From positions 186,001 through 250,000 of the IMG/VR virus record IMGVR_UViG_3300047472_000309: 64,000 nt of DNA. The stretch is one strand, 5' to 3'. The translations under genes were made by a program, and so were the position numbers. The notes beneath the pieces are model-generated. The model was not told the DNA's origin, made no database searches, and saw nothing but the letters and a program-made list of their open reading frames with translations. Below are positions 2,073 to 11,688 of the stretch, one piece after another. How positions within the stretch are numbered: the first letter of the stretch is position 1; every line of letters starts with the position of its first letter.

Positions 2073-2762
2073 TTAGGACCACGCAAGGCTCGCGCTTTGG
2101 TCAGGAGTACCGTTAGAGACAGGAATCGAAGAGCCCGCAGCGGTAGCCGACACTCGATAGACGTCAACACGCACCACTCGTCCAATCGTATTCGTGGTGA
2201 CATTGCCCGAGGCATCCGTCACGATCTTACCAATGTACATATTGGTGTTGGATTCGGCCAGCACGGTAGACGAAGCGATGATGCTGACCACTCCGGCTGT
2301 CAGCTTCAGGTAGTAAAGCGTCGTGGCATTGGTCGCATAGCCGAGACTGTAAGCACCGAGCGTAAATGCTTGGCCCGCAATCAGACACGGAATGCCCGCC
2401 GCGAAATTCAGGGTCTTATTCGACGTATTGAGGGTAGCTGGAATCGCAGTACCCATCGCATCGCCAAAAGCAGACAGCGGAACAATACCGGAGGGCAAGA
2501 GCGACGCGACGGCCGTGTCAATCTGGCCCGAGCTATACGCACCAATCTGGTTGGCGGTCGTGCCGTGTGGGTTGTTGGTGTTATTGGCGTGCGCGTCCGT
2601 ATGGGCGTTCGCCGTGTTGGTCAACTGGGTGGCGGTCTGGCCATTGAGGGCCAGTGCGTTATCGGCCGAGAAGGCAGTTTGCACCTTGCGGCTAATCCCA
2701 CCTACTACCGCCTCGCTAAAGGTATTCAGCGCGCCGTTCAATCCGCTCAGGTCCATGATCAC
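2073..2762 (-). CDS. Virion structural/tail fibre protein; short paralogue of 2852..6145 (start may be ATG 2756)
   Basis: HANNTNNPHGTTANQIG fibre motif; C-terminus RVDVYRVSATAAGSSIPVSNGTP matches RLGNYRVSATRAGGAIPVSGGTP of the 1097-aa protein. Confidence 0.7.
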   Translation of the reverse strand: MIMDLSGLNGALNTFSEAVVGGISRKVQTAFSADNALALNGQTATQLTNTANAHTDAHANNTNNPHGTTANQIGAYSSGQIDTAVASLLPSGIVPLSAFGDAMGTAIPATLNTSNKTLNFAAGIPCLIAGQAFTLGAYSLGYATNATTLYYLKLTAGVVSIIASSTVLAESNTNMYIGKIVTDASGNVTTNTIGRVVRVDVYRVSATAAGSSIPVSNGTPDQSASLAWS

Positions 2763-2851: not shown

Positions 2852-5800
2852 TTACTTCCAGGTGAGCACTGCCGTTGCATCAGGCGTACCGCCCGAGACC
2901 GGAATCGCCCCACCTGCGCGTGTTGCCGAAACCCGGTAATTCCCCAAACGCGTGACCTTTTGCATGTTGATCGCACTGATCTGCGTCGCATTGGTGACCA
3001 GCGTACCAATGAAAAGCACAGTCGGTGACTCCGGCTGATCAGTGGTGCGAATCACGTATGCCGGGGTCCCATTGGTGAACACCGCGTAGATGTAGAAAGT
3101 CGTGCTCGCCGGGTTGGCTTGGATAGTGGTCAGATCAATCGTGGCCGGTTGCAGCTTGTAATACACGCCATTCATGATCAAAGGCTGAATGTCCGTAAAG
3201 TAGACAATCCAGCCTTGGGCCACATCCTGCGACACCTGTACGGACCAATTGGCTTGCGCGGACTGGCTCCAGGCATCGTAAGTCGAGAGGTTGGTCGCAA
3301 AGGGTCGGAACGTGAGCTTAGTTAAGTCATCGGAATTCGTCACCAGTTGTTGGAATTCCCCGAAGCCCTTGCCAGGTACCCCACCCCAAAAGGTCGAGGC
3401 GATTTGCCCCCACACCGGATTGGTCACCAAACGATTCCAGTCCGGGCGGTTCGTACTCTTGGGCACCGCAAAGCGATACGTGTAGATGCCCGTGAAGATC
3501 ACCCGATTCAGGAAGTGTTTGGATGTCCCGCCGATGAGCCAGCAGTCCGAACACTCAACGATGGTCACCCCGCCACCCATGTAGGTGTACTTGTAGCTAC
3601 TTTGGTTATCCGTGAAGGCGCCCGCAAAGCTGTAATTCTGCTTCGCTGGGGACACCGATACCAACGACAAGCCCGTAATGGCCCCGGCGCGAGACCCCGC
3701 CGTAATGGAGAGTTCTCCCAGTGCCGCCATGTCTTTCGCCACGGCGTCGGTCGAAATCCAATTCAACACGGCAAACGGCGGAATCGAAGCGTTCTGCGGC
3801 ACCACGATGGTTACGCGCGAATCCACTGCGCCCACTCCCAATGCAGCGAGCATCGCGGACTTAATCGACCCATACAGCGCAGGCGCGATTGAGGTACTGC
3901 CCGTGAGCGTCAGGTTGCTATCACAGTTCGTGTAACCTGTATTGGAAATGTTCTCCATATACGAAGCACCCGTACAGGTGATCGCCCCTGCGGCGGTGAT
4001 TTCACTGATCATGCCCGCATACGTGACGGGATTCTTCCCGAGGTCCGTTAAGAACTGCCGGTAGGCGTTCGGGGCAAAACCCGTGAGCGTGCCGAAGTTC
4101 TGCGAACTGTAGGTATAGCCGTCCGCGCCCTTTTGAGCCAGGATCAGATCGGTCTGGAAACTTCCCGCGGCGTTCTTGCCACCCCCGTACACCATCACCC
4201 GGTTATTGGGAAGCTGAAACGAACCCATCAAGCCTCCGCCTACGGCCGACCCATACGCGGGTGTGAACACGGTGTTAAGCTTACCCGTGACTGTCAAACC
4301 ACCCGCCAGGGCGAGCACCGGCGCAATCGCGCCCGCGTTCAGCTTACACCGAGTGACCCAACAATTCAAATCCGGCTGGTTCTGATCCACCACCGACACC
4401 CAGTAACCCGATGGGTGATAGGAAAGCGTTTCACCCGTGAGCCAGTTACCTGAGGAAATCGAGCTGCGGTCTGTCAACAGAATAGGTCCCGAGAGAGCGA
4501 CCTTATTGCTACCGTCTAGCGCCACGGTTAGCGGACCCTTATAGTTGGACTCGACACCGCCGGTGCGATTCGTCGGATTCCACACAAAGGTGTAGAACAT
4601 ATTGACCACAGGTTGCTCGCCAGTAGCCGGATTTTGCACCAGGAACTCCACCATGATGCGGGTGCGGACATTGCCATCTGAGCCTTGTGCACTATACGTG
4701 CAGTGACCCAATTGGTTGGGATAGAACGGCACGATGTAGCAGCCGCTCGCACTCGGATCGCGCACCACCAGCGGTTGATTGGCCGCCACATCCACGCAGG
4801 CGTTGGCAAAGCGCATGTTGGTGGTGGAGATATTCTGCCCGTAGAAGCTATTGATCGTCCAGCCTGTCAACGCAGTGGGAACGACCGTATTGCCGTTGCC
4901 GATGGAGGACAAGGGGATCTGGTAGATCTGGTATTCCACTGGCAGACCGGTATTGTCCGCCAAGTCCGCATTAGGGAACATCAGGAACACCGAATCATTA
5001 CCGACGAACGCTTCCGGGTAGGCGTTATTAATCACGCCCGGCAAATTACTTGCCGAAATCACGCAGCCCGTGTGATTGGCGTCGTTAAAGGTGCCGTGGG
5101 TGAGCGAGAGGAACCAGTCCGTGAGATTGTTGCTGGCATCTTGCAGGCGACCCAAAATACAGGCGCCATTGATGTCACTGCGACACACGTAGCGTGCGCT
5201 GGAACCCGACGGGAAATACGCCGGAGCATACTTGCGATTGGTGCGGGTGGGCGTGAGATCTGTAGCCGCCAACACGTTTTTCGTATAGGCGTAGTAAACC
5301 CCTTGCTTCGAGCCATTGGTGCCACTGCGCAAGAACACAAAGGTGCCATCGTCTTCCACAATACCCGGATAGTTACGGGCTTCTCCGTAGAGGGCGATGT
5401 TGGTGGTGGCGCCCTCAAACGAACCCGAGACCCCGGCCGGAAGATAACTAAGCTCCCCGTAGCGCGTGAGCGGCATGCCACTAAAGGCTACCCGACCCTG
5501 CAACTGACTATCGACCTGGGTCTTCGAATAGGTGCCCGCCTGAAGTGGTGTGACGTTGTGCGATTGACCAGATGTCGCTGCGTGCGCATCCAGATCGGCT
5601 TCCAAGGCTGTGATCACTTCAGCCGGGGTTGCGTCACTCAGTTCAGCCGCATTGTCGGCCGTGACCGCTTCTTGCACCTTGGTATTCACCAGCGCTGAGT
5701 TATACGGCGCCACAAAGTCCGTCATGGCGGTCTGCAGACTTTGTAGGGAGGACGTGAGTGGGCTCGTACTCGGTGTTGCTTTCAGTGCTCGATGCGGTGC

Positions 5801-6145
5801 CGCCATCATCCGCAAAGCCATCCTGGGGGCAGGAGCAGGCTCGACCACTTCGTCGACCACTACTGGTTCAGGTTCAGGCGTTGGTTCGGGCTCAGCTTCA
5901 GGTTCAACCGCTGCGACAAGTTCTTCGACCACTGGTTCAGGTTCAGGAGCAGGTTCTTCTACCGGCTCAACGACAGTGGGTTCTTGCGCTGGCGCTTCAG
6001 CGACACTGAGGGTCTCGGTAGACTCAGTCGTCTCAGTTGGTGCCGCAGTCTCTTGAACTTCTTGTGGCGCTTCTTGTGGCATCAGTTCGCCAGTCGGATC
6101 GAGTATTTTGACCAGCGCTGCTAACTTGGTCTTGATCAAGCTCAT
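2852..6145 (-). CDS. Large virion structural/tail fibre protein with an acidic Pro/Glu-rich N-terminal extension
   Basis: 1097 aa, rich in Gly/Ser/Thr/Asn beta-strand sequence; shares N- and C-terminal motifs with 2073..2762; TATG element upstream. Confidence 0.7.
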   Translation of the reverse strand: MSLIKTKLAALVKILDPTGELMPQEAPQEVQETAAPTETTESTETLSVAEAPAQEPTVVEPVEEPAPEPEPVVEELVAAVEPEAEPEPTPEPEPVVVDEVVEPAPAPRMALRMMAAPHRALKATPSTSPLTSSLQSLQTAMTDFVAPYNSALVNTKVQEAVTADNAAELSDATPAEVITALEADLDAHAATSGQSHNVTPLQAGTYSKTQVDSQLQGRVAFSGMPLTRYGELSYLPAGVSGSFEGATTNIALYGEARNYPGIVEDDGTFVFLRSGTNGSKQGVYYAYTKNVLAATDLTPTRTNRKYAPAYFPSGSSARYVCRSDINGACILGRLQDASNNLTDWFLSLTHGTFNDANHTGCVISASNLPGVINNAYPEAFVGNDSVFLMFPNADLADNTGLPVEYQIYQIPLSSIGNGNTVVPTALTGWTINSFYGQNISTTNMRFANACVDVAANQPLVVRDPSASGCYIVPFYPNQLGHCTYSAQGSDGNVRTRIMVEFLVQNPATGEQPVVNMFYTFVWNPTNRTGGVESNYKGPLTVALDGSNKVALSGPILLTDRSSISSGNWLTGETLSYHPSGYWVSVVDQNQPDLNCWVTRCKLNAGAIAPVLALAGGLTVTGKLNTVFTPAYGSAVGGGLMGSFQLPNNRVMVYGGGKNAAGSFQTDLILAQKGADGYTYSSQNFGTLTGFAPNAYRQFLTDLGKNPVTYAGMISEITAAGAITCTGASYMENISNTGYTNCDSNLTLTGSTSIAPALYGSIKSAMLAALGVGAVDSRVTIVVPQNASIPPFAVLNWISTDAVAKDMAALGELSITAGSRAGAITGLSLVSVSPAKQNYSFAGAFTDNQSSYKYTYMGGGVTIVECSDCWLIGGTSKHFLNRVIFTGIYTYRFAVPKSTNRPDWNRLVTNPVWGQIASTFWGGVPGKGFGEFQQLVTNSDDLTKLTFRPFATNLSTYDAWSQSAQANWSVQVSQDVAQGWIVYFTDIQPLIMNGVYYKLQPATIDLTTIQANPASTTFYIYAVFTNGTPAYVIRTTDQPESPTVLFIGTLVTNATQISAINMQKVTRLGNYRVSATRAGGAIPVSGGTPDATAVLTWK

Positions 6146-6183
6146 GATGTCCTCTTGCTTAGTATTAACATAGCATGGACGAG

Positions 6184-6212
6184 CGGCATAAAGCCCGGAG
6201 GTTTCCCTCCGG
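6184..6212 (-). terminator. Hairpin (GAAA loop) followed by TTTATGCCG
   Basis: Minus strand CCGGAGG-GAAA-CCTCCGG-GCTTTATGCCG. Confidence 0.75.
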
Positions 6213-6226
6213 ACCCATGCAAGGCT

Positions 6227-6802
6227 TTAATACGGGAAATCTGCCTTCTTGATTTTCACCATGCGGCCATCTTCGTGATGCCACACGATGCCCTCAATCG
6301 AGCGATCCCGCAGGTACTCCATCAGACCCGTGAAAGTACGCGGACAGTCTTCCACCAGATCCTTCCCATGCGGGATCAGAACATGCTCGGTCAACTTTTC
6401 CGGATTGGCACCATGACGCGTTCCAATCTTCGGCCCACACACTTCGTACGTTCCATCCGGTACCTCGACCCACTGATCCAGCGCTTTGAGCACAGCTTCC
6501 ATCACGTACTTACCGGCAGGCGTTTGGGCGCTAACCCAGCCCGGCCAGTGACCCGTGACGGGGTCCGGTGCAGCTTGAGCAGGGATGAAGCCTTCGGGCT
6601 TTTTGCGACCCGTCTTCAGATCGAAGCGCATGAATGCGCACTGATCCTTGATCAGAACCGCAACGCCGTCCCACTTGCGCGTGGCGATGCCTTCGCCATT
6701 TTGCACCCACTCTGCACCCGGCACGACTTCGTCGCGCGCTTTGCGCTCGCCAGCCGAGTTCGGCTCGTAATTGCGTTGAAACAGCGACATGATTTTCTGC
6801 AT
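6227..6802 (-). CDS. RNA-ligase-like nucleotidyltransferase (DUF5565-like)
   Basis: Motif I ATRKWDG (KxDG), TYEVCGPKI, EGIVWHH and terminal MVKIK motif V. Confidence 0.7.
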   Translation of the reverse strand: MQKIMSLFQRNYEPNSAGERKARDEVVPGAEWVQNGEGIATRKWDGVAVLIKDQCAFMRFDLKTGRKKPEGFIPAQAAPDPVTGHWPGWVSAQTPAGKYVMEAVLKALDQWVEVPDGTYEVCGPKIGTRHGANPEKLTEHVLIPHGKDLVEDCPRTFTGLMEYLRDRSIEGIVWHHEDGRMVKIKKADFPY

Positions 6803-6874
6803 AACTACACCTTAATGTTGAGTTCGAAGTTTTCGATCCCATCACCCCTCACCATTAAGGTTTACATCTACTGC

Positions 6875-7261
6875 TTATCGATCGTGCGGCCGTTCCCGCA
6901 CTTCACCGGTTGACCGCAGGCGACGATTGTAGTTCACGCGGGTTACGCGCACCGTCATCGTCACGCCTTCCAACGCTTCCCGATTGGTCGTTGGTGCTAA
7001 GGTGACATCCCCGAGCTCTGTGTTAAACACCACCAGCCCTTCATGCTTGCCGTTGCGTTTCAGCTCGAAACCGATCTGACGCGCAGGCATGGGCATGCGC
7101 CGGATGGCGTGCCACTCAAAGCCTTGTCCCTCAACACTCACTACTTCGACCGACTCCACGCAATCAGTGTCATCAGCGTACTCCATGCGATCCGTCTCAG
7201 ACAACAAGTTGTGCGAGGCGGGCATCCCCAGGTCAATCTTAACTTCGTCGTAATTGCTCAT
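6875..7261 (-). CDS. Hypothetical protein
   Basis: 128-aa ORF in the co-directional gene run. Confidence 0.6.
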   Translation of the reverse strand: MSNYDEVKIDLGMPASHNLLSETDRMEYADDTDCVESVEVVSVEGQGFEWHAIRRMPMPARQIGFELKRNGKHEGLVVFNTELGDVTLAPTTNREALEGVTMTVRVTRVNYNRRLRSTGEVRERPHDR

Positions 7262-7449
7262 CTTACACTCAAACAGAAACTGAAATGAATTAGGCCTTCT
7301 TCATCACGCTTCCTTTTTCATGTTGGCTCCTCGAGCAGGACGATCAGGTTGTGCTCTCCTGTTAGCCTCGCAATCGAGTGGAGAATACGGTCAGATCGGT
7401 CAAGTAGGCTTGTGTGCACAACATGGTGAATGCAAGACAAAAATTACTT

Positions 7450-8196
7450 TTACACGAAGTCCTTCGGTTGGGCAGCCAGCTCGTGCAACAAGGAACTCGG
7501 GTACTTATCCGGGTTCATGGCTTTGATCACTTCACCCATGTAGTTCTGGTGGTGATTGTCTTCCCAGTCCTTGACCGTGTGATGCAGGAGTCGACACGGA
7601 TTACAGCGCGTACACGCTTTGATAGTCTTGTGCGCTCCCTCGCCAATCTCGTAGGGCGTCTCACACACCCAGGTGGCCATCACGAGGCGCTTATCGATCC
7701 GATCAACGGTGTCGTACTTGGTGTGGTGCGTTTCCACCAGCGGGAAGACTAACTGCGGTACCGCTTCACGTGGGCCGCGTGTCATCACCCAGCCAGCTTC
7801 CCAGTAGGCTTTAAACTGGGGTTGATAGACTGGCGCTTGATCCCCGAGCACGTAGCCGACACTCACCGAATGATGGCGCTCCGAATCAAAGGCGATTAAA
7901 GCAGCCGTGAGCCAACTGATGGGCTGCACTGCCTTGATGTCGCTATTCTCGCCAAAGAGTCGATTCAGCTCGATCTCGTGATCCTTGAGCACCCGATGCT
8001 TATAGTGCTTTTCAAAGAGCGCGAAGAGCTTCTTGCGCGCTTCTTTCTCCTTGATCAACTTCAGCGGATGCGGGTTCGCTTGAACAAAGAGCGTATCCAC
8101 ATCCCCGTAATGCAGGAACCATTGAAGCAGGTAGGTCGAGTCCATGCCGCCTGAAAAAAGCAGGAGGGGGACTTTCTTGTTGTCTTCTTCTTCCAT
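7450..8196 (-). CDS. queC: QueC-like PP-loop ATPase (7-cyano-7-deazaguanine synthase family)
   Basis: LLFSGGMDST PP-loop; C-terminal WVC...CTRCNPC zinc motif; VGYVLGD and LVFPL segments. Confidence 0.7.
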   Translation of the reverse strand: MEEEDNKKVPLLLFSGGMDSTYLLQWFLHYGDVDTLFVQANPHPLKLIKEKEARKKLFALFEKHYKHRVLKDHEIELNRLFGENSDIKAVQPISWLTAALIAFDSERHHSVSVGYVLGDQAPVYQPQFKAYWEAGWVMTRGPREAVPQLVFPLVETHHTKYDTVDRIDKRLVMATWVCETPYEIGEGAHKTIKACTRCNPCRLLHHTVKDWEDNHHQNYMGEVIKAMNPDKYPSSLLHELAAQPKDFV

Positions 8197-8200
8197 GGTG

Positions 8201-8614
8201 TTAGACGTTAAAGAGTTCTTCGATGCTCACCTTCTTGTAGACCGGTGAGTAGCTATCCAACCACCCATCGGGCACGTAATGACACATGCCGTCCCGATAG
8301 AGCCCGAGCTTGATGAACTGGTCGATCATGTACTGGCCGACTAACTGGATCGCCCCCGCATAGATCTTACCGTCGTTCTCCGAGCCCTGCATTGCGTGTT
8401 CCTTAACGGTCCACTCCATGTAGGACTTCAGGCCCGCTTCCGCATCAATCGGATTGTTGATGTAGGGCGGCAAGAGTTCCAGCACTTCTGGCAGTGAACC
8501 CTCGAAGTCTTTCATCCAGTTGACCTTCTTGCGAAACACCGGTTCGATGTCCCACAGATCGAACACGATGCGCTCTGGACCCGGTGGGGTTTCCACTGTT
8601 TTAGGATAGAGCAT
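8201..8614 (-). CDS. Hypothetical protein; paralogue of 8617..9027
   Basis: GAIQLVGQYMIDQFIKLGLY resembles GVVELGEQLAQQFKELRAY. Confidence 0.7.
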   Translation of the reverse strand: MLYPKTVETPPGPERIVFDLWDIEPVFRKKVNWMKDFEGSLPEVLELLPPYINNPIDAEAGLKSYMEWTVKEHAMQGSENDGKIYAGAIQLVGQYMIDQFIKLGLYRDGMCHYVPDGWLDSYSPVYKKVSIEELFNV

Positions 8615-8616
8615 AA

Positions 8617-9027
8617 CTAGATCCTTGCGAGAATTAGATCGGCATGCGCAATGCGACCTGAGAGATAATAGTTCAGTTGCTTGTTGTGGTCATAGGCGCG
8701 CAGCTCTTTGAACTGCTGGGCTAACTGTTCACCCAGTTCCACCACGCCTTGAGCGAGCGCAATCGAGGACTGACCTTCGTCGGTCAGAAAACCTTCATCG
8801 CGAATTTGATTGGCGTAGTCCCACAGGCGTGAGTACGCCATTTGTTCGTGCGACACACAATCGACCACGCGATCGAGCACCATATCGAGATACTCTTCCA
8901 GATAGTCCTGGGCAATCACTTCGCCCTCGCACGTCTTATTGTGCTTAAAGAAAGCCGTGTCGTTCAAGAACCGCCGCATCGGTTCCATCGTGTCAATGAT
9001 GATGTATTCCGTTCCCATGTTTGCCAT
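8617..9027 (-). CDS. Hypothetical protein (start moved to ATG 9027); paralogue of 8201..8614
   Basis: GAGGAG RBS before MANMGTEY; the track's upstream extension crosses a hairpin. Confidence 0.7.
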   Translation of the reverse strand: MANMGTEYIIIDTMEPMRRFLNDTAFFKHNKTCEGEVIAQDYLEEYLDMVLDRVVDCVSHEQMAYSRLWDYANQIRDEGFLTDEGQSSIALAQGVVELGEQLAQQFKELRAYDHNKQLNYYLSGRIAHADLILARI

Positions 9028-9075
9028 GATGAGCTCCTCATTTCCGCATACCGTAAGCCGTGTATGTAAAAAATG

Positions 9076-9103
9076 CAGCATAGAGCCGGGACCGAAGTCC
9101 CGG
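9076..9103 (-). terminator. Hairpin (UUCG loop) followed by TATGCTG and a T-run
   Basis: Minus strand CCGGGAC-TTCG-GTCCCGG-CTCTATGCTGCATTTTT. Confidence 0.7.
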
Positions 9104-9217
9104 CATCCATGTCCCCTTTCCGGAGGAGGTCTCACGGTCTCATCGAGCGTATGCGCTTTCAATGAAGCGCTCTCATCGCGTAGACTTAACAGGCCACACA
9201 GGCTCTGCATAACATAG

Positions 9218-9248
9218 CGTCATAAAGGCGGGCCCGGAGAGGCCGCCC
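9218..9248 (-). terminator. Hairpin followed by TTTATGACG, ending the fibre/lectin/lipase operon
   Basis: GC-rich stem downstream of the lipase gene. Confidence 0.6.
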
Positions 9249-9327
9249 ATATGACCGGCTCGCGCCGAACGACAACCACCTCTCAGGAGAAGGAACGATG
9301 CCCCATCACGAACAGTTCCATACAATA

Positions 9328-10050
9328 CTAGGATTGCGGAAACCAGTTGCCCGCGATCGCTTCTTGTACACGAGCCACCAGCCGGTCAATCGAATGATCC
9401 TGATCGGAGAAGCCCGAGGGTTTCCAGTCGGTCGCACTGATCCATTCAGCGGCCGTGGACATCAACCACATGTACTTGCCTGCCGGATTGTGGACGTAGC
9501 CTTGACGAGGCGGCCAGCCAAACCAGCGATCCGCCCCTTGCACGGTACAGACTGCATTCGCCAGCTCCGGGCCGTAAGCTGTCCACCATTCGGGTGTGGC
9601 GAACATCGGCGGCTCAAACGCGTAGAGGTCACCGAGCCGTTCCTTCGGGATAAACATCGGTGCGAGTAGCGTGCGCTCGGCACCCAACGAATGTCCTTCG
9701 ATGTTAATTGCTGCGGTGGCCGGAATCTTCGAGAGTGCCCAGGCCCAGAACTTATCCATGCCCTCGATTACTCCGGCGGCTACCTGACCGCCTTTCAGGC
9801 AGTCATGGGGTGCTAACCAGACATCCATGATGAGGTCCGCCCCATAACCCTGGTTGTAACGCGTGCCCGCGATCGTCACATAGTAACGACCCTTGGCATC
9901 CTGCGAGACGACCCCTTGGTGGGTGGCGTCTTGGTATTGACCGAGAAAGGTGTAGCCGAGCTCCACGAACGCCTTCTGGGCAGCCAGGGCATCCGCAATG
10001 TAAACAGCTTGTGCGCGCTGCGCGGCTGCCAGAAGTGCGATTGGGTTCAT
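9328..10050 (-). CDS. Class 3 lipase / alpha-beta hydrolase
   Basis: VTIAGT lid motif, IEGHSLGAE nucleophile elbow, YAFEPP, candidate catalytic Asp (GAD) and His (DHSID). Confidence 0.85.
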   Translation of the reverse strand: MNPIALLAAAQRAQAVYIADALAAQKAFVELGYTFLGQYQDATHQGVVSQDAKGRYYVTIAGTRYNQGYGADLIMDVWLAPHDCLKGGQVAAGVIEGMDKFWAWALSKIPATAAINIEGHSLGAERTLLAPMFIPKERLGDLYAFEPPMFATPEWWTAYGPELANAVCTVQGADRWFGWPPRQGYVHNPAGKYMWLMSTAAEWISATDWKPSGFSDQDHSIDRLVARVQEAIAGNWFPQS

Positions 10051-10053
10051 TGC

Positions 10054-10767
10054 TTAAAGTGTCCTTACGACGTTACTGATGACTCCGTTGACCACATTGA
10101 ACGTGATACCCACGGCGCCATCCAAACAACCCGCGTCCGTGCCACCGCTACCAATGCCAGTTTGATACGTACCGGCGTAGAGTTCCGCCGCCTTCGTGCC
10201 ACCCTTACTACCGAGCAGCAGATAAGCACCGCGATACTGAATACCGTTCAATACCGAGCTTGACGCACCGAGCGCCACCAATGCGTTGTCGACTGCCGCA
10301 ATCGGGGGATTCGTTACCCCTGGCTCAACGGGCGCGACACCACTGGCAGGTTCATCGTAGGTGACCAGCACGAAGTTCGTGCCTGCGGCGAGTGCACTTA
10401 CGTCCGCTGAAAACTGCGCGGAGCCATAAGGCGTCGAGCTCGGTGCACCGTCCGAGGCTTCACCGAAAATATCGTACGAGCGACTAAAAGCGATGTTGCC
10501 GTACTTGTCAAAGGTAACGAGACTGTAGGAGCGAACCGGACCCAACTTCTGGGCGCCATTCATCCACAGTCCGCCATTGGCTGCCGCGGTCCGGTTCTGA
10601 AGCAGTCCCAACGAATACGCCGTAAAGTCGTTATCGCCGTGGTACTGCGTCCAGGTCCCGTTCACGTTGCGAAAGGCCCGACGAACCTTGGTCCAAGTGC
10701 CGTTGATGTTGCGCCACAGGTGTTTGGTGACGGTCCACGTTCCACTGATGTTCTTGTAGATCGGCAT
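10054..10767 (-). CDS. Tail-associated protein with a GG-type lectin (ILEI/FAM3, T4 gp35-like) domain
   Basis: N-terminal NISGTW/NINGTW/NVNGTW repeats; RSYSLVTFD...SRSYDIFG...VLVTYDEP...LVALGAS...YRGAYLLLGSKG fits the GG-domain pattern. Start set at MPIYK. Confidence 0.7.
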   Translation of the reverse strand: MPIYKNISGTWTVTKHLWRNINGTWTKVRRAFRNVNGTWTQYHGDNDFTAYSLGLLQNRTAAANGGLWMNGAQKLGPVRSYSLVTFDKYGNIAFSRSYDIFGEASDGAPSSTPYGSAQFSADVSALAAGTNFVLVTYDEPASGVAPVEPGVTNPPIAAVDNALVALGASSSVLNGIQYRGAYLLLGSKGGTKAAELYAGTYQTGIGSGGTDAGCLDGAVGITFNVVNGVISNVVRTL

Positions 10768-10769
10768 GC

Positions 10770-11315
10770 TTACACCTGATACCAAGTATCGCCATTCGCA
10801 CCACCCGACGGAGCAGCAGCGGATACGGTGGTCTTCCCGTTGCCGCCGCTTACATACGTGCCACCTTCCACCAGGTAGCTGGCACCATCGTGGTAGATTT
10901 CAGCCGTAGTGCCGGGGGCCAGCACCAGCGAACTCGCGCCGTTGCTTTGCGAAGACAGGATGTTAGAGGCCGTGAGCGTCCAGTTAAACGCCGAGGTATT
11001 TTCAAACACCAAGCGCTTACCCGCATTGGCGGGCAACGCAGCAGGCAAAGCAGTACTCAGCGCGCCCGTAGTGTTGGCCGCATCGGTCTGGTACACATAC
11101 CCCCAGGGATCGGCTGGCAGGGTGCTGGCGCCCGTTTTGATCGATACCAGACCCCGTTGGCTGCCGACCTGTGCGCCAAGCGCAGTATCTGCATTCTGGC
11201 GTGTCGTCGCCTCGTTGCTGATCGCCGTGCTATTGGCCGAGTCCTTAGCGTGGATAGCGGTGCCGGTACTGGTAACTGCAGTTTGAAGCTGAGCGAGTTC
11301 GGTAGAGAGGGACAT
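10770..11315 (-). CDS. Short tail fibre-like protein
   Basis: NEATTRQNADTAL coiled segment, T4 gp10-like beta module, terminal APSGGANGDTWYQV fibre motif; TATG element upstream. Confidence 0.65.
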   Translation of the reverse strand: MSLSTELAQLQTAVTSTGTAIHAKDSANSTAISNEATTRQNADTALGAQVGSQRGLVSIKTGASTLPADPWGYVYQTDAANTTGALSTALPAALPANAGKRLVFENTSAFNWTLTASNILSSQSNGASSLVLAPGTTAEIYHDGASYLVEGGTYVSGGNGKTTVSAAAPSGGANGDTWYQV

Positions 11316-11365
11316 GTACTGCTCCAGTGAGAAAGAATAGATTCATACGATGGCTTTCGATTTAA

Positions 11366-11395
11366 CGGCATAGGAGGCGAGCCGAAGCTCGCCTC
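11366..11395 (-). terminator. Hairpin (UUCG loop) followed by TATGCCG
   Basis: Minus strand GAGGCGAGC-TTCG-GCTCGCCTC-CTATGCCG. Confidence 0.75.
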
Positions 11396-11403
11396 AAGTC
11401 CAG

Positions 11404-11688
11404 TCACTCAACTGGCAAGATGTAGATCGGTGAACTATCCTGCGGTTCGTAAAGCGGCTTTTCTTCCCGACCCAACGAACGACGAATCGCCTGCTTCTGA
11501 CCCTGCTTCGCTTGCATGAAATCTGCAATGCGAGCACCGGCTTCAGCCTGCGTATCGAAACGCATCGCCCGAGTTTCCAGCGTCACGATGTTGGGGACAT
11601 CGCCCCGGTCTGCGTGTTCGCTAAAGTACTCGATGTTGCTGTGAGTGCCCGCGCGCGTCGGTGAACCCAAAACAAATTGGTACGGCAT
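11404..11688 (-). CDS. Hypothetical protein
   Basis: 94-aa ORF in a tight gene run. Confidence 0.6.
   Translation of the reverse strand: MPYQFVLGSPTRAGTHSNIEYFSEHADRGDVPNIVTLETRAMRFDTQAEAGARIADFMQAKQGQKQAIRRSLGREEKPLYEPQDSSPIYILPVE

What the first reader, a model, noticed from the sequence alone, without database searches (positions are those of the whole stretch)
7450..8196. Orphan QueC-like enzyme with no deazaguanine pathway genes nearby
Seen: intact SGGMDS PP-loop and zinc motif, with a longer spacer (C-x16-CxxCxxC) than canonical QueC. No folE, queD, queE or dpdA in 64 kb. Established: phage QueC normally clusters with those genes for DNA modification, whereas QueC-family proteins of QatABCD and type IV CBASS (Cap9) modify proteins. 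Inference: this may be a protein-modifying or counter-defence enzyme rather than a preQ0 synthase.
Basis: partly seen in the sequence, partly recalled or inferred. Interest (0 to 1): 0.6.

Follow-up and report, generated by a model that had tools for sequence, protein, structure and literature searches.

The report
Phage QueC-like enzyme, retooled pocket
This jumbo-phage gene belongs to a large, almost purely viral sister group of the queuosine enzyme QueC that keeps the ATP and zinc sites but has lost every residue QueC uses to hold its substrate, so it almost certainly does not make preQ0 and its real substrate is still unknown.

Summary
The ORF at 7450-8196 (-) is real: 248 aa, with SGGMDS and C-x16-CxxCxxC. 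The complete 310,654-bp phage genome with terminal repeats has no FolE, FolE2, QueD, radical-SAM/QueE or TGT/DpdA gene and only this one QueC-like gene.

The protein falls below Pfam's QueC threshold (19.4 vs 22 bits) but fits phrog_1550 (1.3e-28). It belongs to a family of about 1,750 50%-identity clusters, nearly all viral and single-domain.

The fold is QueC/Cap9 (Z 15.5-16.6; hhalign to E. coli QueC 97% probability). The PP-loop, D119, K160 and the four Cys are kept. The residues that bind 7-carboxy-7-deazaguanine, or are essential in QueC and Cap9 (Y35, R99, Y131, D133, Y189), are replaced by a family-specific set: K46, E50, Q91, W95, Y115 and E179.

It also lacks QatC's extensions and its T-x-T motif, and no partner gene is conserved across lineages. 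Neighbours vary. The commonest theme is replication and nucleotide metabolism, and one lineage of about 26 loci has SNF2 helicase - QueC-like - PolB - NUDIX.

Best reading: an active, stand-alone adenylating amidoligase with a non-CDG substrate. The "not a preQ0 synthase" reading is supported; a protein-modifying or counter-defence role is untested. Hutinet et al. 2019 already flagged such singletons in one sentence.

The parts
7450..8196 (-). Gene for a 248-aa QueC-like PP-loop ATP pyrophosphatase (phrog_1550 family); the stop codon is included
8137..8154 (-). PP-loop S15-G-G-M-D19-S20 (pyrophosphate binding); G17, D19 and S20 are invariant in 139 relatives
   Evidence: role taken from the QatC-ATP structure in PMC13279940
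8047..8061 (-). K46-x3-E50 on helix 2, a family-specific invariant pair. It occupies the place of the QueC YxQxHxxE motif, whose essential Tyr35 is Ala40 here (Gly/Ala in the family)
7912..7926 (-). Q91-P-x-x-W95, invariant Gln and Trp where QueC has VPxRN..F. The essential, base-stacking Arg is missing
7837..7854 (-). Y115-V-L-G-D119-Q120 loop after strand 4. D119 aligns with QueC D127. The following QueC loop FSGYPDC (Tyr and Asp that bind the deazaguanine) is shortened by two residues and is not conserved
7717..7719 (-). K160, invariant, aligned with the conserved QueC K165
7594..7665 (-). Predicted Zn site C178-E179-x-P181 ... C195-x2-C198-x2-C201. All four Cys are invariant. E179 (137 of 139) replaces the essential QueC Tyr189. 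The x16 spacer is a variable loop in the family

Best explanation
The gene encodes a catalytically competent, zinc-containing PP-loop ATP pyrophosphatase. It belongs to a large clade that is almost exclusively phage-borne and is a distant sister of QueC and Cap9 (catalogued as phrog_1550). Like its relatives it should bind Mg-ATP through SGGMDS, D119 and K160, transfer AMP onto an oxygen (carboxylate or carbonyl) of its substrate, and let ammonia or an amine displace AMP to give an amide or amidine. It is not a preQ0 synthase. The pocket residues that hold 7-carboxy-7-deazaguanine in QueC and Cap9 have been replaced by a different, equally conserved set (K46, E50, Q91, W95, Y115, E179), so the substrate is something else. 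It works as a stand-alone single-domain enzyme with no dedicated, conserved partner gene. Its substrate is most likely a small nucleobase- or nucleotide-type metabolite connected with phage DNA replication or precursor supply. Shown: gene, fold, family, motif retention and loss, absence of pathway genes, variable context. Inferred: the chemistry (by homology). Weakly inferred: the substrate class (from gene neighbourhoods only).
For: Family and fold: phrog_1550 E 1.3e-28. The profile finds 1,747 clusters, 880 of them at E<=1e-10, nearly all 200-300 aa. ESM Atlas neighbours are 67-100% viral. The family profile against PDB gives QueC 2pg3 at 6.6e-10, 3bl5 at 1.8e-7, Cap9 at 3e-7 and QatC at 5e-4. 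hhalign to E. coli QueC gives 97.2% probability, E 3e-11 over 190 columns. The AF2 model has pLDDT 92.4. Foldseek's top hits are QueC and Cap9. VIA-align gives Cap9 Z 16.6 and QueC Z 15.5, against 12.2 or less for other PP-loop enzymes. Active enzyme: G17, D19, S20, E50, Q91, K160 and all four Cys are invariant in 139 diverse members, and they persist in a separate lineage of 26 loci. Not QueC: Y35 becomes A40, R99 is deleted or replaced, Y131 becomes A121, D133 becomes V123 and Y189 becomes E179. Y35A, R99A, Y131A and Y189A kill E. coli QueC (PMC13329287), and the equivalent Tyr, Asp and Arg contact the base in Cap9 (bioRxiv 10.1101/2025.04.06.647259; PMC13279940). No FolE, FolE2, QueD, QueE or DpdA exists in the complete genome. 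Stand-alone: the extra sequence in 10 longer members matched no other Pfam domain above threshold, and the upstream neighbours are unrelated (all hhalign probabilities below 2%). Context: SNF2 helicase - small ORF - QueC-like - PolB - x - NUDIX in about 26 loci. HD phosphohydrolase plus dCTP-deaminase-like genes lie nearby in L015, with the deaminase-like cluster within 8 kb in five loci including the PA1C-like L003. A dCMP deaminase lies nearby in phiEa2809. RNR, DnaB and NAD-ligase occur among 144 neighbours from 19 lineages.
Against: No substrate is identified. The model's coordinates could not be inspected, so the pocket assignments rest on sequence and profile alignments, which disagree by two residues around Q91 (vs 65). 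The nucleotide-metabolism context is a plurality rather than a rule. In this window and in many jumbo-phage loci the gene sits among small unannotated ORFs and tail-fibre-like genes. The 26-locus synteny is a single phage lineage. The conserved Tyr115 and Asp119 could still bind a deazaguanine in a shifted register.
Confidence: 0.55

Rival explanations
1. It is a Cap9/QatC-type conjugating enzyme or a counter-defence enzyme. It would adenylate a carboxylate and ligate it to a protein amine (host or phage target). Alternatively it would interfere with 7-deazaguanine-dependent immunity (type IV CBASS, QatABCD), for example by consuming or diverting their substrate.
For: Cap9 is the best structural match (Z 16.6, rmsd 2.6 over 169 residues). 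The invariant Cys178-Glu179 matches the 'CE' of the Cap9 chain, where canonical QueC has 'CY'. An Acb3 (CBASS inhibitor) homologue lies two genes downstream in locus L012, and a Tad3-domain protein lies nearby in L009. Many loci are arrays of small unannotated ORFs.
Against: Cap9's base-binding Y115, D117 and R86 are not conserved. QatC's extensions and T-x-T motif are absent, and QatC scores 17.7 against a cut-off of 280 bits. No partner gene is conserved. No TGT/Cap10 is in the genome. Anti-defence neighbours appear in only 2 of 19 lineages. The family is far more widespread than would be expected for a counter to two uncommon systems (my inference).
Confidence: 0.15
2. It is an RNA or tRNA-modifying or repair enzyme of the PP-loop type (like TilS, ThiI, MnmA, TtuA), acting on host or phage tRNA.
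For: ThiI (Z 12.2), TilS (Z 11.6) and NcsA (Z 11.1) are the next structural matches. An RNA ligase gene (phrog_14301, E 2.5e-81) lies two genes downstream in this window.
Against: QueC and Cap9 score 3-4 Z units higher. The protein has no RNA-binding domain (THUMP, TilS C-terminal domains and the like); it is catalytic core plus Zn knuckle only. The RNA ligase neighbour was not among the gene clusters shared beyond this phage's closest relatives. No tRNA gene is in the 64-kb window.
Confidence: 0.1
3. It is after all a functional QueC (CDG to ADG/preQ0) that relies on host-made CDG, for queuosine-tRNA boosting or for a host or undetected transglycosylase.
For: Annotation pipelines call it so. 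It has the QueC fold and Zn motif. A conserved Tyr115 and Asp119 lie near the QueC YPD loop. Halovirus HVTV-1 shows that DNA can be modified without a phage DpdA (PMC6884629).
Against: All four residues shown essential in E. coli QueC are missing (PMC13329287). TIGR00364 scores 13.5 against a cut-off of 150.3 bits, and Pfam QueC is below its threshold. No other pathway gene is in the complete genome. Hutinet et al. 2019 already judged such singletons to be another subfamily.
Confidence: 0.07
4. It is a non-catalytic relic or decoy that only binds ATP or a protein.
For: None specific. No activity has been shown for any member.
Against: PP-loop, Lys, Asp and pocket residues are strictly conserved over about 1,750 clusters at 25-35% pairwise identity. 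This indicates selection on catalysis.
Confidence: 0.03

Closest known systems
Canonical QueC (7-cyano-7-deazaguanine synthase; PDB 3BL5, 2PG3; Pfam PF06508 cluster 1 of Libby et al. 2026)
   Same: Same fold and size. It shares the SGGxDS PP-loop, an Asp equivalent to D127, a Lys equivalent to K165, and a C-terminal Cys4 zinc knuckle ending in CxxCxxC. hhalign gives 97% probability and structural Z is 15.5.
   Different: Y35, R99, Y131/D133 (YPDC) and Y189 are absent, and the FSGYPD loop is two residues shorter. The family-specific invariants are K46, E50, Q91, W95, Y115 and E179. There is no linkage to queD or queE. Scores are below the Pfam and TIGRFAM thresholds.
Cap9 of type IV CBASS (PDB 9NTO)
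   Same: Minimal single-domain QueC-like enzyme. It is the best structural match (Z 16.6) and shares the Cys-Glu start of the zinc knuckle.
   Different: Cap9 keeps the ancestral deazaguanine-binding Y115, D117 and R86 and works with CD-NTase and Cap10. None of these residues or partners is present here.
QatC of QatABCD (PDB 9Y01, 9VLK)
   Same: QueC-family core with a remodelled substrate site and a long Cys spacer (x19). ATP-site geometry is conserved.
   Different: QatC is about 430-465 aa, with essential N- and C-terminal extensions, an invariant T278/T280 pair and an obligate QatB partner. This protein is 248 aa with none of these. NCBIfam QatC scores 17.7 against 280 bits, and the profile E-value to QatC is only 5e-4.
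'Singleton QueC-like' proteins of phages, e.g. Escherichia phage ECML-4 (Hutinet et al. 2019, PMC6884629); phrog_1550
   Same: Same situation: a lone QueC-like gene with no deazaguanine pathway. ECML-4 is a Kuttervirus of the Ackermannviridae. Named Ackermannviridae phages (phiEa2809, Vibrio phage YC) are among the 160 phage records that match this protein, most of which are Salmonella and other enterobacterial phages. This protein fits phrog_1550 at 1.3e-28.
   Different: Only 26-34% identical to those members. Its nearest cultured relative is Burkholderia phage FLC9 gp223 (62%). I did not align ECML-4's own protein. No member has an assigned function.

Membership tests
Canonical QueC (preQ0 synthase) | SGGxDS PP-loop | tested here: met
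   SGGMDS at aa 15-20
Canonical QueC (preQ0 synthase) | Cys4 zinc motif C-x8-CxxCxxC | tested here: met
   All four Cys are present and invariant. The spacer is x16 here and ranges from 8 to 58 in the family
Canonical QueC (preQ0 synthase) | Substrate and catalytic signature YxQxHxxE, VPxRN and YPDC plus Tyr189 (Y35, R99, Y131 and Y189 are essential in vivo, PMC13329287) | tested here: not met
   Aligned positions are A40, a gap or Q91, A121/V123 and E179. The family consensus likewise lacks them
Canonical QueC (preQ0 synthase) | Curated model thresholds (Pfam PF06508 at 22 bits; TIGR00364 at 150.3 bits) | tested here: not met
   19.4 bits and 13.5 bits. The six-frame genome scan gave 13.4 bits
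Canonical QueC (preQ0 synthase) | Genomic association with folE/queD/queE (and dpdA in phages) | tested here: not met
   None in the complete 310,654-bp genome. None appeared among the neighbour clusters shared between loci or among the top families of 144 neighbours from 19 lineages
Canonical QueC (preQ0 synthase) | Converts CDG to preQ0 and complements a queC deletion | not testable with these tools
   Needs a bench assay
Cap9 (type IV CBASS) | Deazaguanine-binding Tyr115/Asp117/Arg86 retained | tested here: not met
   residue roles from bioRxiv 10.1101/2025.04.06.647259
Cap9 (type IV CBASS) | Operon with CD-NTase and the TGT-like Cap10 | tested here: not met
   No TGT-family gene in the genome. 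CD-NTase was not searched for specifically. Neighbours are unrelated
QatC (QatABCD) | N- and C-terminal extensions around the QueC core (about 430-465 aa) and the T278/T280 motif | tested here: not met
   248 aa, core only. NCBIfam QatC scores 17.7 against 280 bits
QatC (QatABCD) | Adjacent QatA, QatB and QatD | tested here: not met
   PADLOC gives only a weak QueC-model hit for the protein itself, E 3e-4. The neighbours were scanned with Pfam and PHROGs only (not PADLOC) and show no ATPase or TatD hit
Phage singleton QueC-like clade (phrog_1550) | Full-length match to the family profile | tested here: met
   phrog_1550 E 1.3e-28 over residues 3-220. Full-length matches to 150 listed representatives
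Phage singleton QueC-like clade (phrog_1550) | Family signature K46-x3-E50, Q91-x3-W95, Y115-x3-D119, K160, C178-E179 and CxxCxxC | tested here: met
   All are present in this protein, and each is conserved in at least 126 of 139 members (Y115 126, K46 135, the rest 137-139)

The most novel reading that the evidence does not exclude
The phage-wide clade catalyses a reaction not yet described for any QueC-family enzyme. One possibility is ATP-dependent amidation or amination of a nucleotide or nucleobase precursor that yields an unrecognised DNA or nucleotide modification. Another is an enzymatic counter to 7-deazaguanine-dependent immunity (type IV CBASS, QatABCD). Either would make it a new branch of phage nucleic-acid or anti-defence chemistry present in Ackermannviridae and many jumbo phages.
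Probability: 0.15. Interest if true: 0.8.

Novelty: new variant of a known kind. Interest (0 to 1): 0.45.

Why it matters
Annotation pipelines label this family 'QueC' or '7-cyano-7-deazaguanine synthase', or score it as a queuosine auxiliary metabolic gene. That invites false calls of 7-deazaguanine DNA modification in many phages, including the therapeutically used Kuttervirus and Pseudomonas jumbo phages. This analysis shows that the deazaguanine-binding residues are gone while a different pocket is strictly conserved. That turns a routine annotation into a defined open problem: a very widespread, stand-alone phage enzyme with known chemistry (adenylation and amidation) and unknown substrate. 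It falls largely outside the recent PF06508 survey (Libby et al. 2026), whose ten clusters do not describe it. Cultured phages are available for a direct test (FLC9, Vi01-like, PA1C-like, RSL2).

Tried and rejected
(1) Long Cys spacer as a distinguishing mark: rejected, because spacer length is highly variable within the family.

(2) A conserved small partner protein encoded immediately upstream, as QatB is for QatC: 12 upstream-ORF groups were compared by hhalign and all probabilities were below 2%.

(3) RNA ligase linkage: the ligase two genes downstream was not among the gene clusters shared beyond this phage's closest relatives.

(4) Domain fusions as a clue: the 10 longest relatives show no second Pfam domain above threshold.

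(5) Mycobacterium phage Muddy, named with ECML-4 by Hutinet 2019: bases 25,000-48,228 of the record contain no match to the family HMM, and gp47 is unrelated. The first half was not examined, so Muddy's protein may belong to another subfamily.

The scan with the close-relative alignment found no relative in 185,579 species' genomes. This tests only the FLC9-like subgroup; 'phage-restricted' otherwise rests on Atlas taxon shares.

(7) Promoter and terminator scan of 6000-11500: counts are not above shuffled expectation.

(8) Literature: no paper assigning a function to this clade was found. The thymidine-hypermodification paper on ViI does not mention a PP-loop enzyme.

Full report
**Observation.**
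The minus-strand ORF 7450..8196 encodes 248 aa. SGGMDS lies at residues 15-20, and Cys178-x16-Cys195-x2-Cys198-x2-Cys201 is present as described. The gene starts 4 nt after the stop of the upstream ORF (8201-8614) inside a long block of co-directional genes.

The window is bases 186001-250000 of a 310,654-bp virus record with direct terminal repeats, rated 100% complete. Six-frame Pfam scans of the whole record at E<=1 found no FolE (PF01227), FolE2 (PF02649), QueD (PF01242), TGT/DpdA (PF01702) or radical-SAM/QueE (PF04055). Each of these models rang in the control genomes. PF06508 finds only this locus, below threshold. The 'orphan' status therefore holds for the complete genome and not just the 64 kb.

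**What the protein is.**
- Curated QueC models barely see it. Pfam QueC gives 19.4 bits (cut-off 22) on residues 11-62 only. TIGR00364 gives 13.5 against 150.3 bits, NCBIfam QatC 17.7 against 280 bits, and the PADLOC QueC model E 3e-4.
- It fits phrog_1550 ('QueC-like') at 1.3e-28 over residues 3-220.
- The nearest cultured relative is Burkholderia phage FLC9 gp223, at 62% identity.
- tblastn finds 160 phage records. They include PA1C/PS119XW-like Pseudomonas jumbo phages, RSL2/RSF1/FLC6/FLC8-like Ralstonia and Burkholderia jumbo phages, and Ackermannviridae such as phiEa2809 and Vibrio phage YC. Many Salmonella, Escherichia, Klebsiella and Serratia phage records also match.
- A profile of the 19 word-search hits, run against 1.84 billion representatives, returned 1,747 clusters at E<=1e-3 and 880 at E<=1e-10. 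Coverage was full-length and lengths were mostly 200-300 aa.
- ESM Atlas neighbours are 67-100% viral.

**Fold.**
An AlphaFold2 model built on 139 diverse relatives has pLDDT 92.4 and pTM 0.90.
- Foldseek ranks QueC 3BL5 first (E 1.9e-6), followed by 2PG3 and Cap9 9NTO.
- The Foldseek-independent search gives Cap9 Z 16.6 (rmsd 2.6, 169 residues) and QueC Z 15.5 (rmsd 3.2, 181 residues).
- ThiI, TilS, YcfA, NcsA and LarE follow at Z 10-12.
- The family profile hits QueC 2PG3 (6.6e-10), 3BL5 (1.8e-7), Cap9 (3e-7) and QatC (5e-4) in PDB sequences.
- hhalign to E. coli QueC gives 97.2% probability and E 3e-11 over 190 columns.

The protein is a true but distant member of the QueC superfamily, nearer to QueC and Cap9 than to QatC.

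**What is kept and what is lost.**
Across 139 members the invariant residues are G17, D19, S20, E50, Q91, K160, C178, C195, C198 and C201. K46, W95, Y115, D119, E179 and P181 are conserved at 90% or more. A separate lineage of 26 loci keeps K46, E50, Q91, W95, Y115, D119, K160, C-E and the Cys triad. In that lineage H108, W132 and W176 vary, so those three are probably structural.

Against E. coli QueC numbering (supported):
- D127 aligns with D119 and K165 with K160, and the PP-loop and zinc Cys are retained.
- Y35 of YxQxHxxE aligns with A40 (Gly/Ala in the family).
- R99 of VPxRN falls in a two-residue gap, or on Q91 in the HMMER alignment.
- Y131 and D133 of YPDC align with A121 and V123, both variable columns next to a two-residue deletion.
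- Y189 aligns with E179.

Libby et al. 2026 showed that Y35A, R99A, Y131A and Y189A abolish queuosine formation. The Cap9-CdnD structure shows the equivalent Tyr, Asp and Arg stacking on and hydrogen-bonding to the deazaguanine. The machinery for ATP and zinc is therefore intact. The CDG-binding pocket has been replaced by a different pocket that is just as strongly conserved and, judged from the residue replacements, more polar and acidic.

**Partners and context.**
- In the window, the flanking ORFs 6875-7261, 8201-8614, 8617-9210 and 9328-10050 have no Pfam or PHROG match.
- 6227-6802 is an RNA ligase, and 2852-6145 and 2073-2762 are tail-fibre-like.
- In 47 IMG/VR loci plus annotated phages, the immediate upstream ORFs are unrelated to one another.
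- One lineage (about 26 loci, on contigs up to 327 kb) has the fixed order SNF2 helicase - small ORF - QueC-like - family-B DNA polymerase - ORF - NUDIX.
- L015 has an HD-domain protein and a dCTP-deaminase-like gene just downstream. L016 and L018 share the deaminase-like gene, and PS119XW (PA1C-like) has one five genes downstream.
- phiEa2809 has a dCMP deaminase two genes downstream.

A tally of 144 neighbours from 19 lineages gave:

| Neighbour type | Count |
|---|---|
| AAA/BCS1-like ATPase | 3 |
| HD phosphohydrolase (phrog_16069) | 3 |
| SNF2 helicase | 2 |
| RNR, DnaB-like helicase, NAD-dependent ligase, DCD, dCMP deaminase, NUDIX, PolB | 1 each |
| Acb3 homologue, Tad3-domain protein | 1 each |

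No deazaguanine-pathway family appeared among the top families. Other loci are runs of small unannotated ORFs. Ten longer relatives carry no second Pfam domain above threshold.

**Mechanism.**
By homology, the enzyme binds Mg-ATP, adenylates a substrate oxygen with release of PPi, and passes the activated group to ammonia or an amine. That chemistry is shown for QueC and Cap9 and only inferred here.

Because the deazaguanine contacts are gone, the substrate is very probably not CDG. Because no partner is conserved and the protein is core-only, a free small molecule is more likely than a dedicated protein substrate. The recurrent replication and dNTP-pool neighbours point weakly to a nucleobase or nucleotide-type substrate. 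I put about 0.8 on 'active enzyme of a distinct phage clade, not a preQ0 synthase', and about 0.35 on the nucleotide-metabolism substrate class.

**Rivals.**
- A Cap9/QatC-like protein conjugase or counter-defence enzyme (0.15) is hinted at by the Cap9 structural rank, the shared Cys-Glu, and the Acb3 or Tad3 neighbours in 2 of 19 lineages.
- A tRNA-directed PP-loop enzyme (0.10) has only the local RNA ligase and lower-ranked structural matches in its favour.
- A true QueC using host CDG (0.07) is contradicted by the missing essential residues.
- A non-catalytic relic (0.03) is contradicted by the strict conservation of catalytic residues.

**Relation to the literature.**
- Hutinet et al. [quoted passage not shown]
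- I found no later functional work.
- The 2026 PF06508 survey describes QueC, QatC, Cap9, LarE, a PfkB-linked cluster, WbpG-like, GMPS and archaeal clusters, and none of these descriptions fits this clade.
- A Vi01-like homologue (Sajous1 gp66) was detected once by mass spectrometry.

The existence of orphan phage QueC-likes is therefore known. What this analysis adds is the size of the clade, its signature, the explicit loss of the CDG pocket, and the lack of any conserved partner.

**Verdict.**
The gene is a member of an uncharacterised but catalogued phage family that is a variant of the QueC kind. Interest is moderate (0.45).

The read-mapping tools were not used.

Noticed in passing
window 6227-6802 (-): A 191-aa RNA ligase (phrog_14301, E 2.5e-81; Pfam RLIG1, 31.4 bits) with a K-W-D-G nucleotidyl-transferase motif lies two genes downstream of the QueC-like gene. 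The window region overlapping it matches FLC9 at 75% DNA identity.
   Followed up: partly
window 2852-6145 (-) and 2073-2762 (-): A 1,097-aa tail-fibre-like protein (phrog_3573, E 3.7e-153) has a long Pro/Glu/Val-rich low-complexity N-terminus. The 229-aa ORF just downstream shares its C-terminal module (phrog_26864, phrog_3573) and a tail-fibre motif (phrog_8147).
   Followed up: partly
window 9328-10050 (-): A 240-aa ORF contains a GHSLGA motif reminiscent of the lipase/esterase nucleophile elbow, but has no Pfam or PHROG match at the thresholds used. It is conserved in FLC9 and in a near-identical IMG/VR contig.
   Followed up: no
L012 2981-3709 (IMG/VR contig of 278,524 bp): A homologue of the CBASS inhibitor Acb3 (PF25187, E 2.9e-37) lies two genes downstream of that phage's QueC-like gene. 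In another genome (the one holding L042) the Acb3 homologue lies more than 100 kb away.
   Followed up: partly
L009 5421-6740; L009 9753-11102; L017 9933-11264; L003 2371-3498: A 439-aa protein with a Tad3 (Thoeris inhibitor) domain lies near the QueC-like gene in L009. A BCS1-like AAA ATPase (phrog_14322 / phrog_7485) recurs within four genes of the QueC-like gene in three lineages, including the PA1C-like Pseudomonas phages.
   Followed up: no
L019 5857-16267 and about 25 similar loci: A lineage of uncultured phages (contigs up to 327 kb) has the conserved block SNF2 helicase - small ORF - QueC-like - family-B DNA polymerase (about 1,220 aa) - ORF - NUDIX hydrolase.
   Followed up: partly
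window 1-64000: No tRNA or tmRNA gene was detected in the 64-kb window. GC content is even at 0.54-0.59, and nearly all long ORFs in the first 22 kb are on the minus strand.
   Followed up: no
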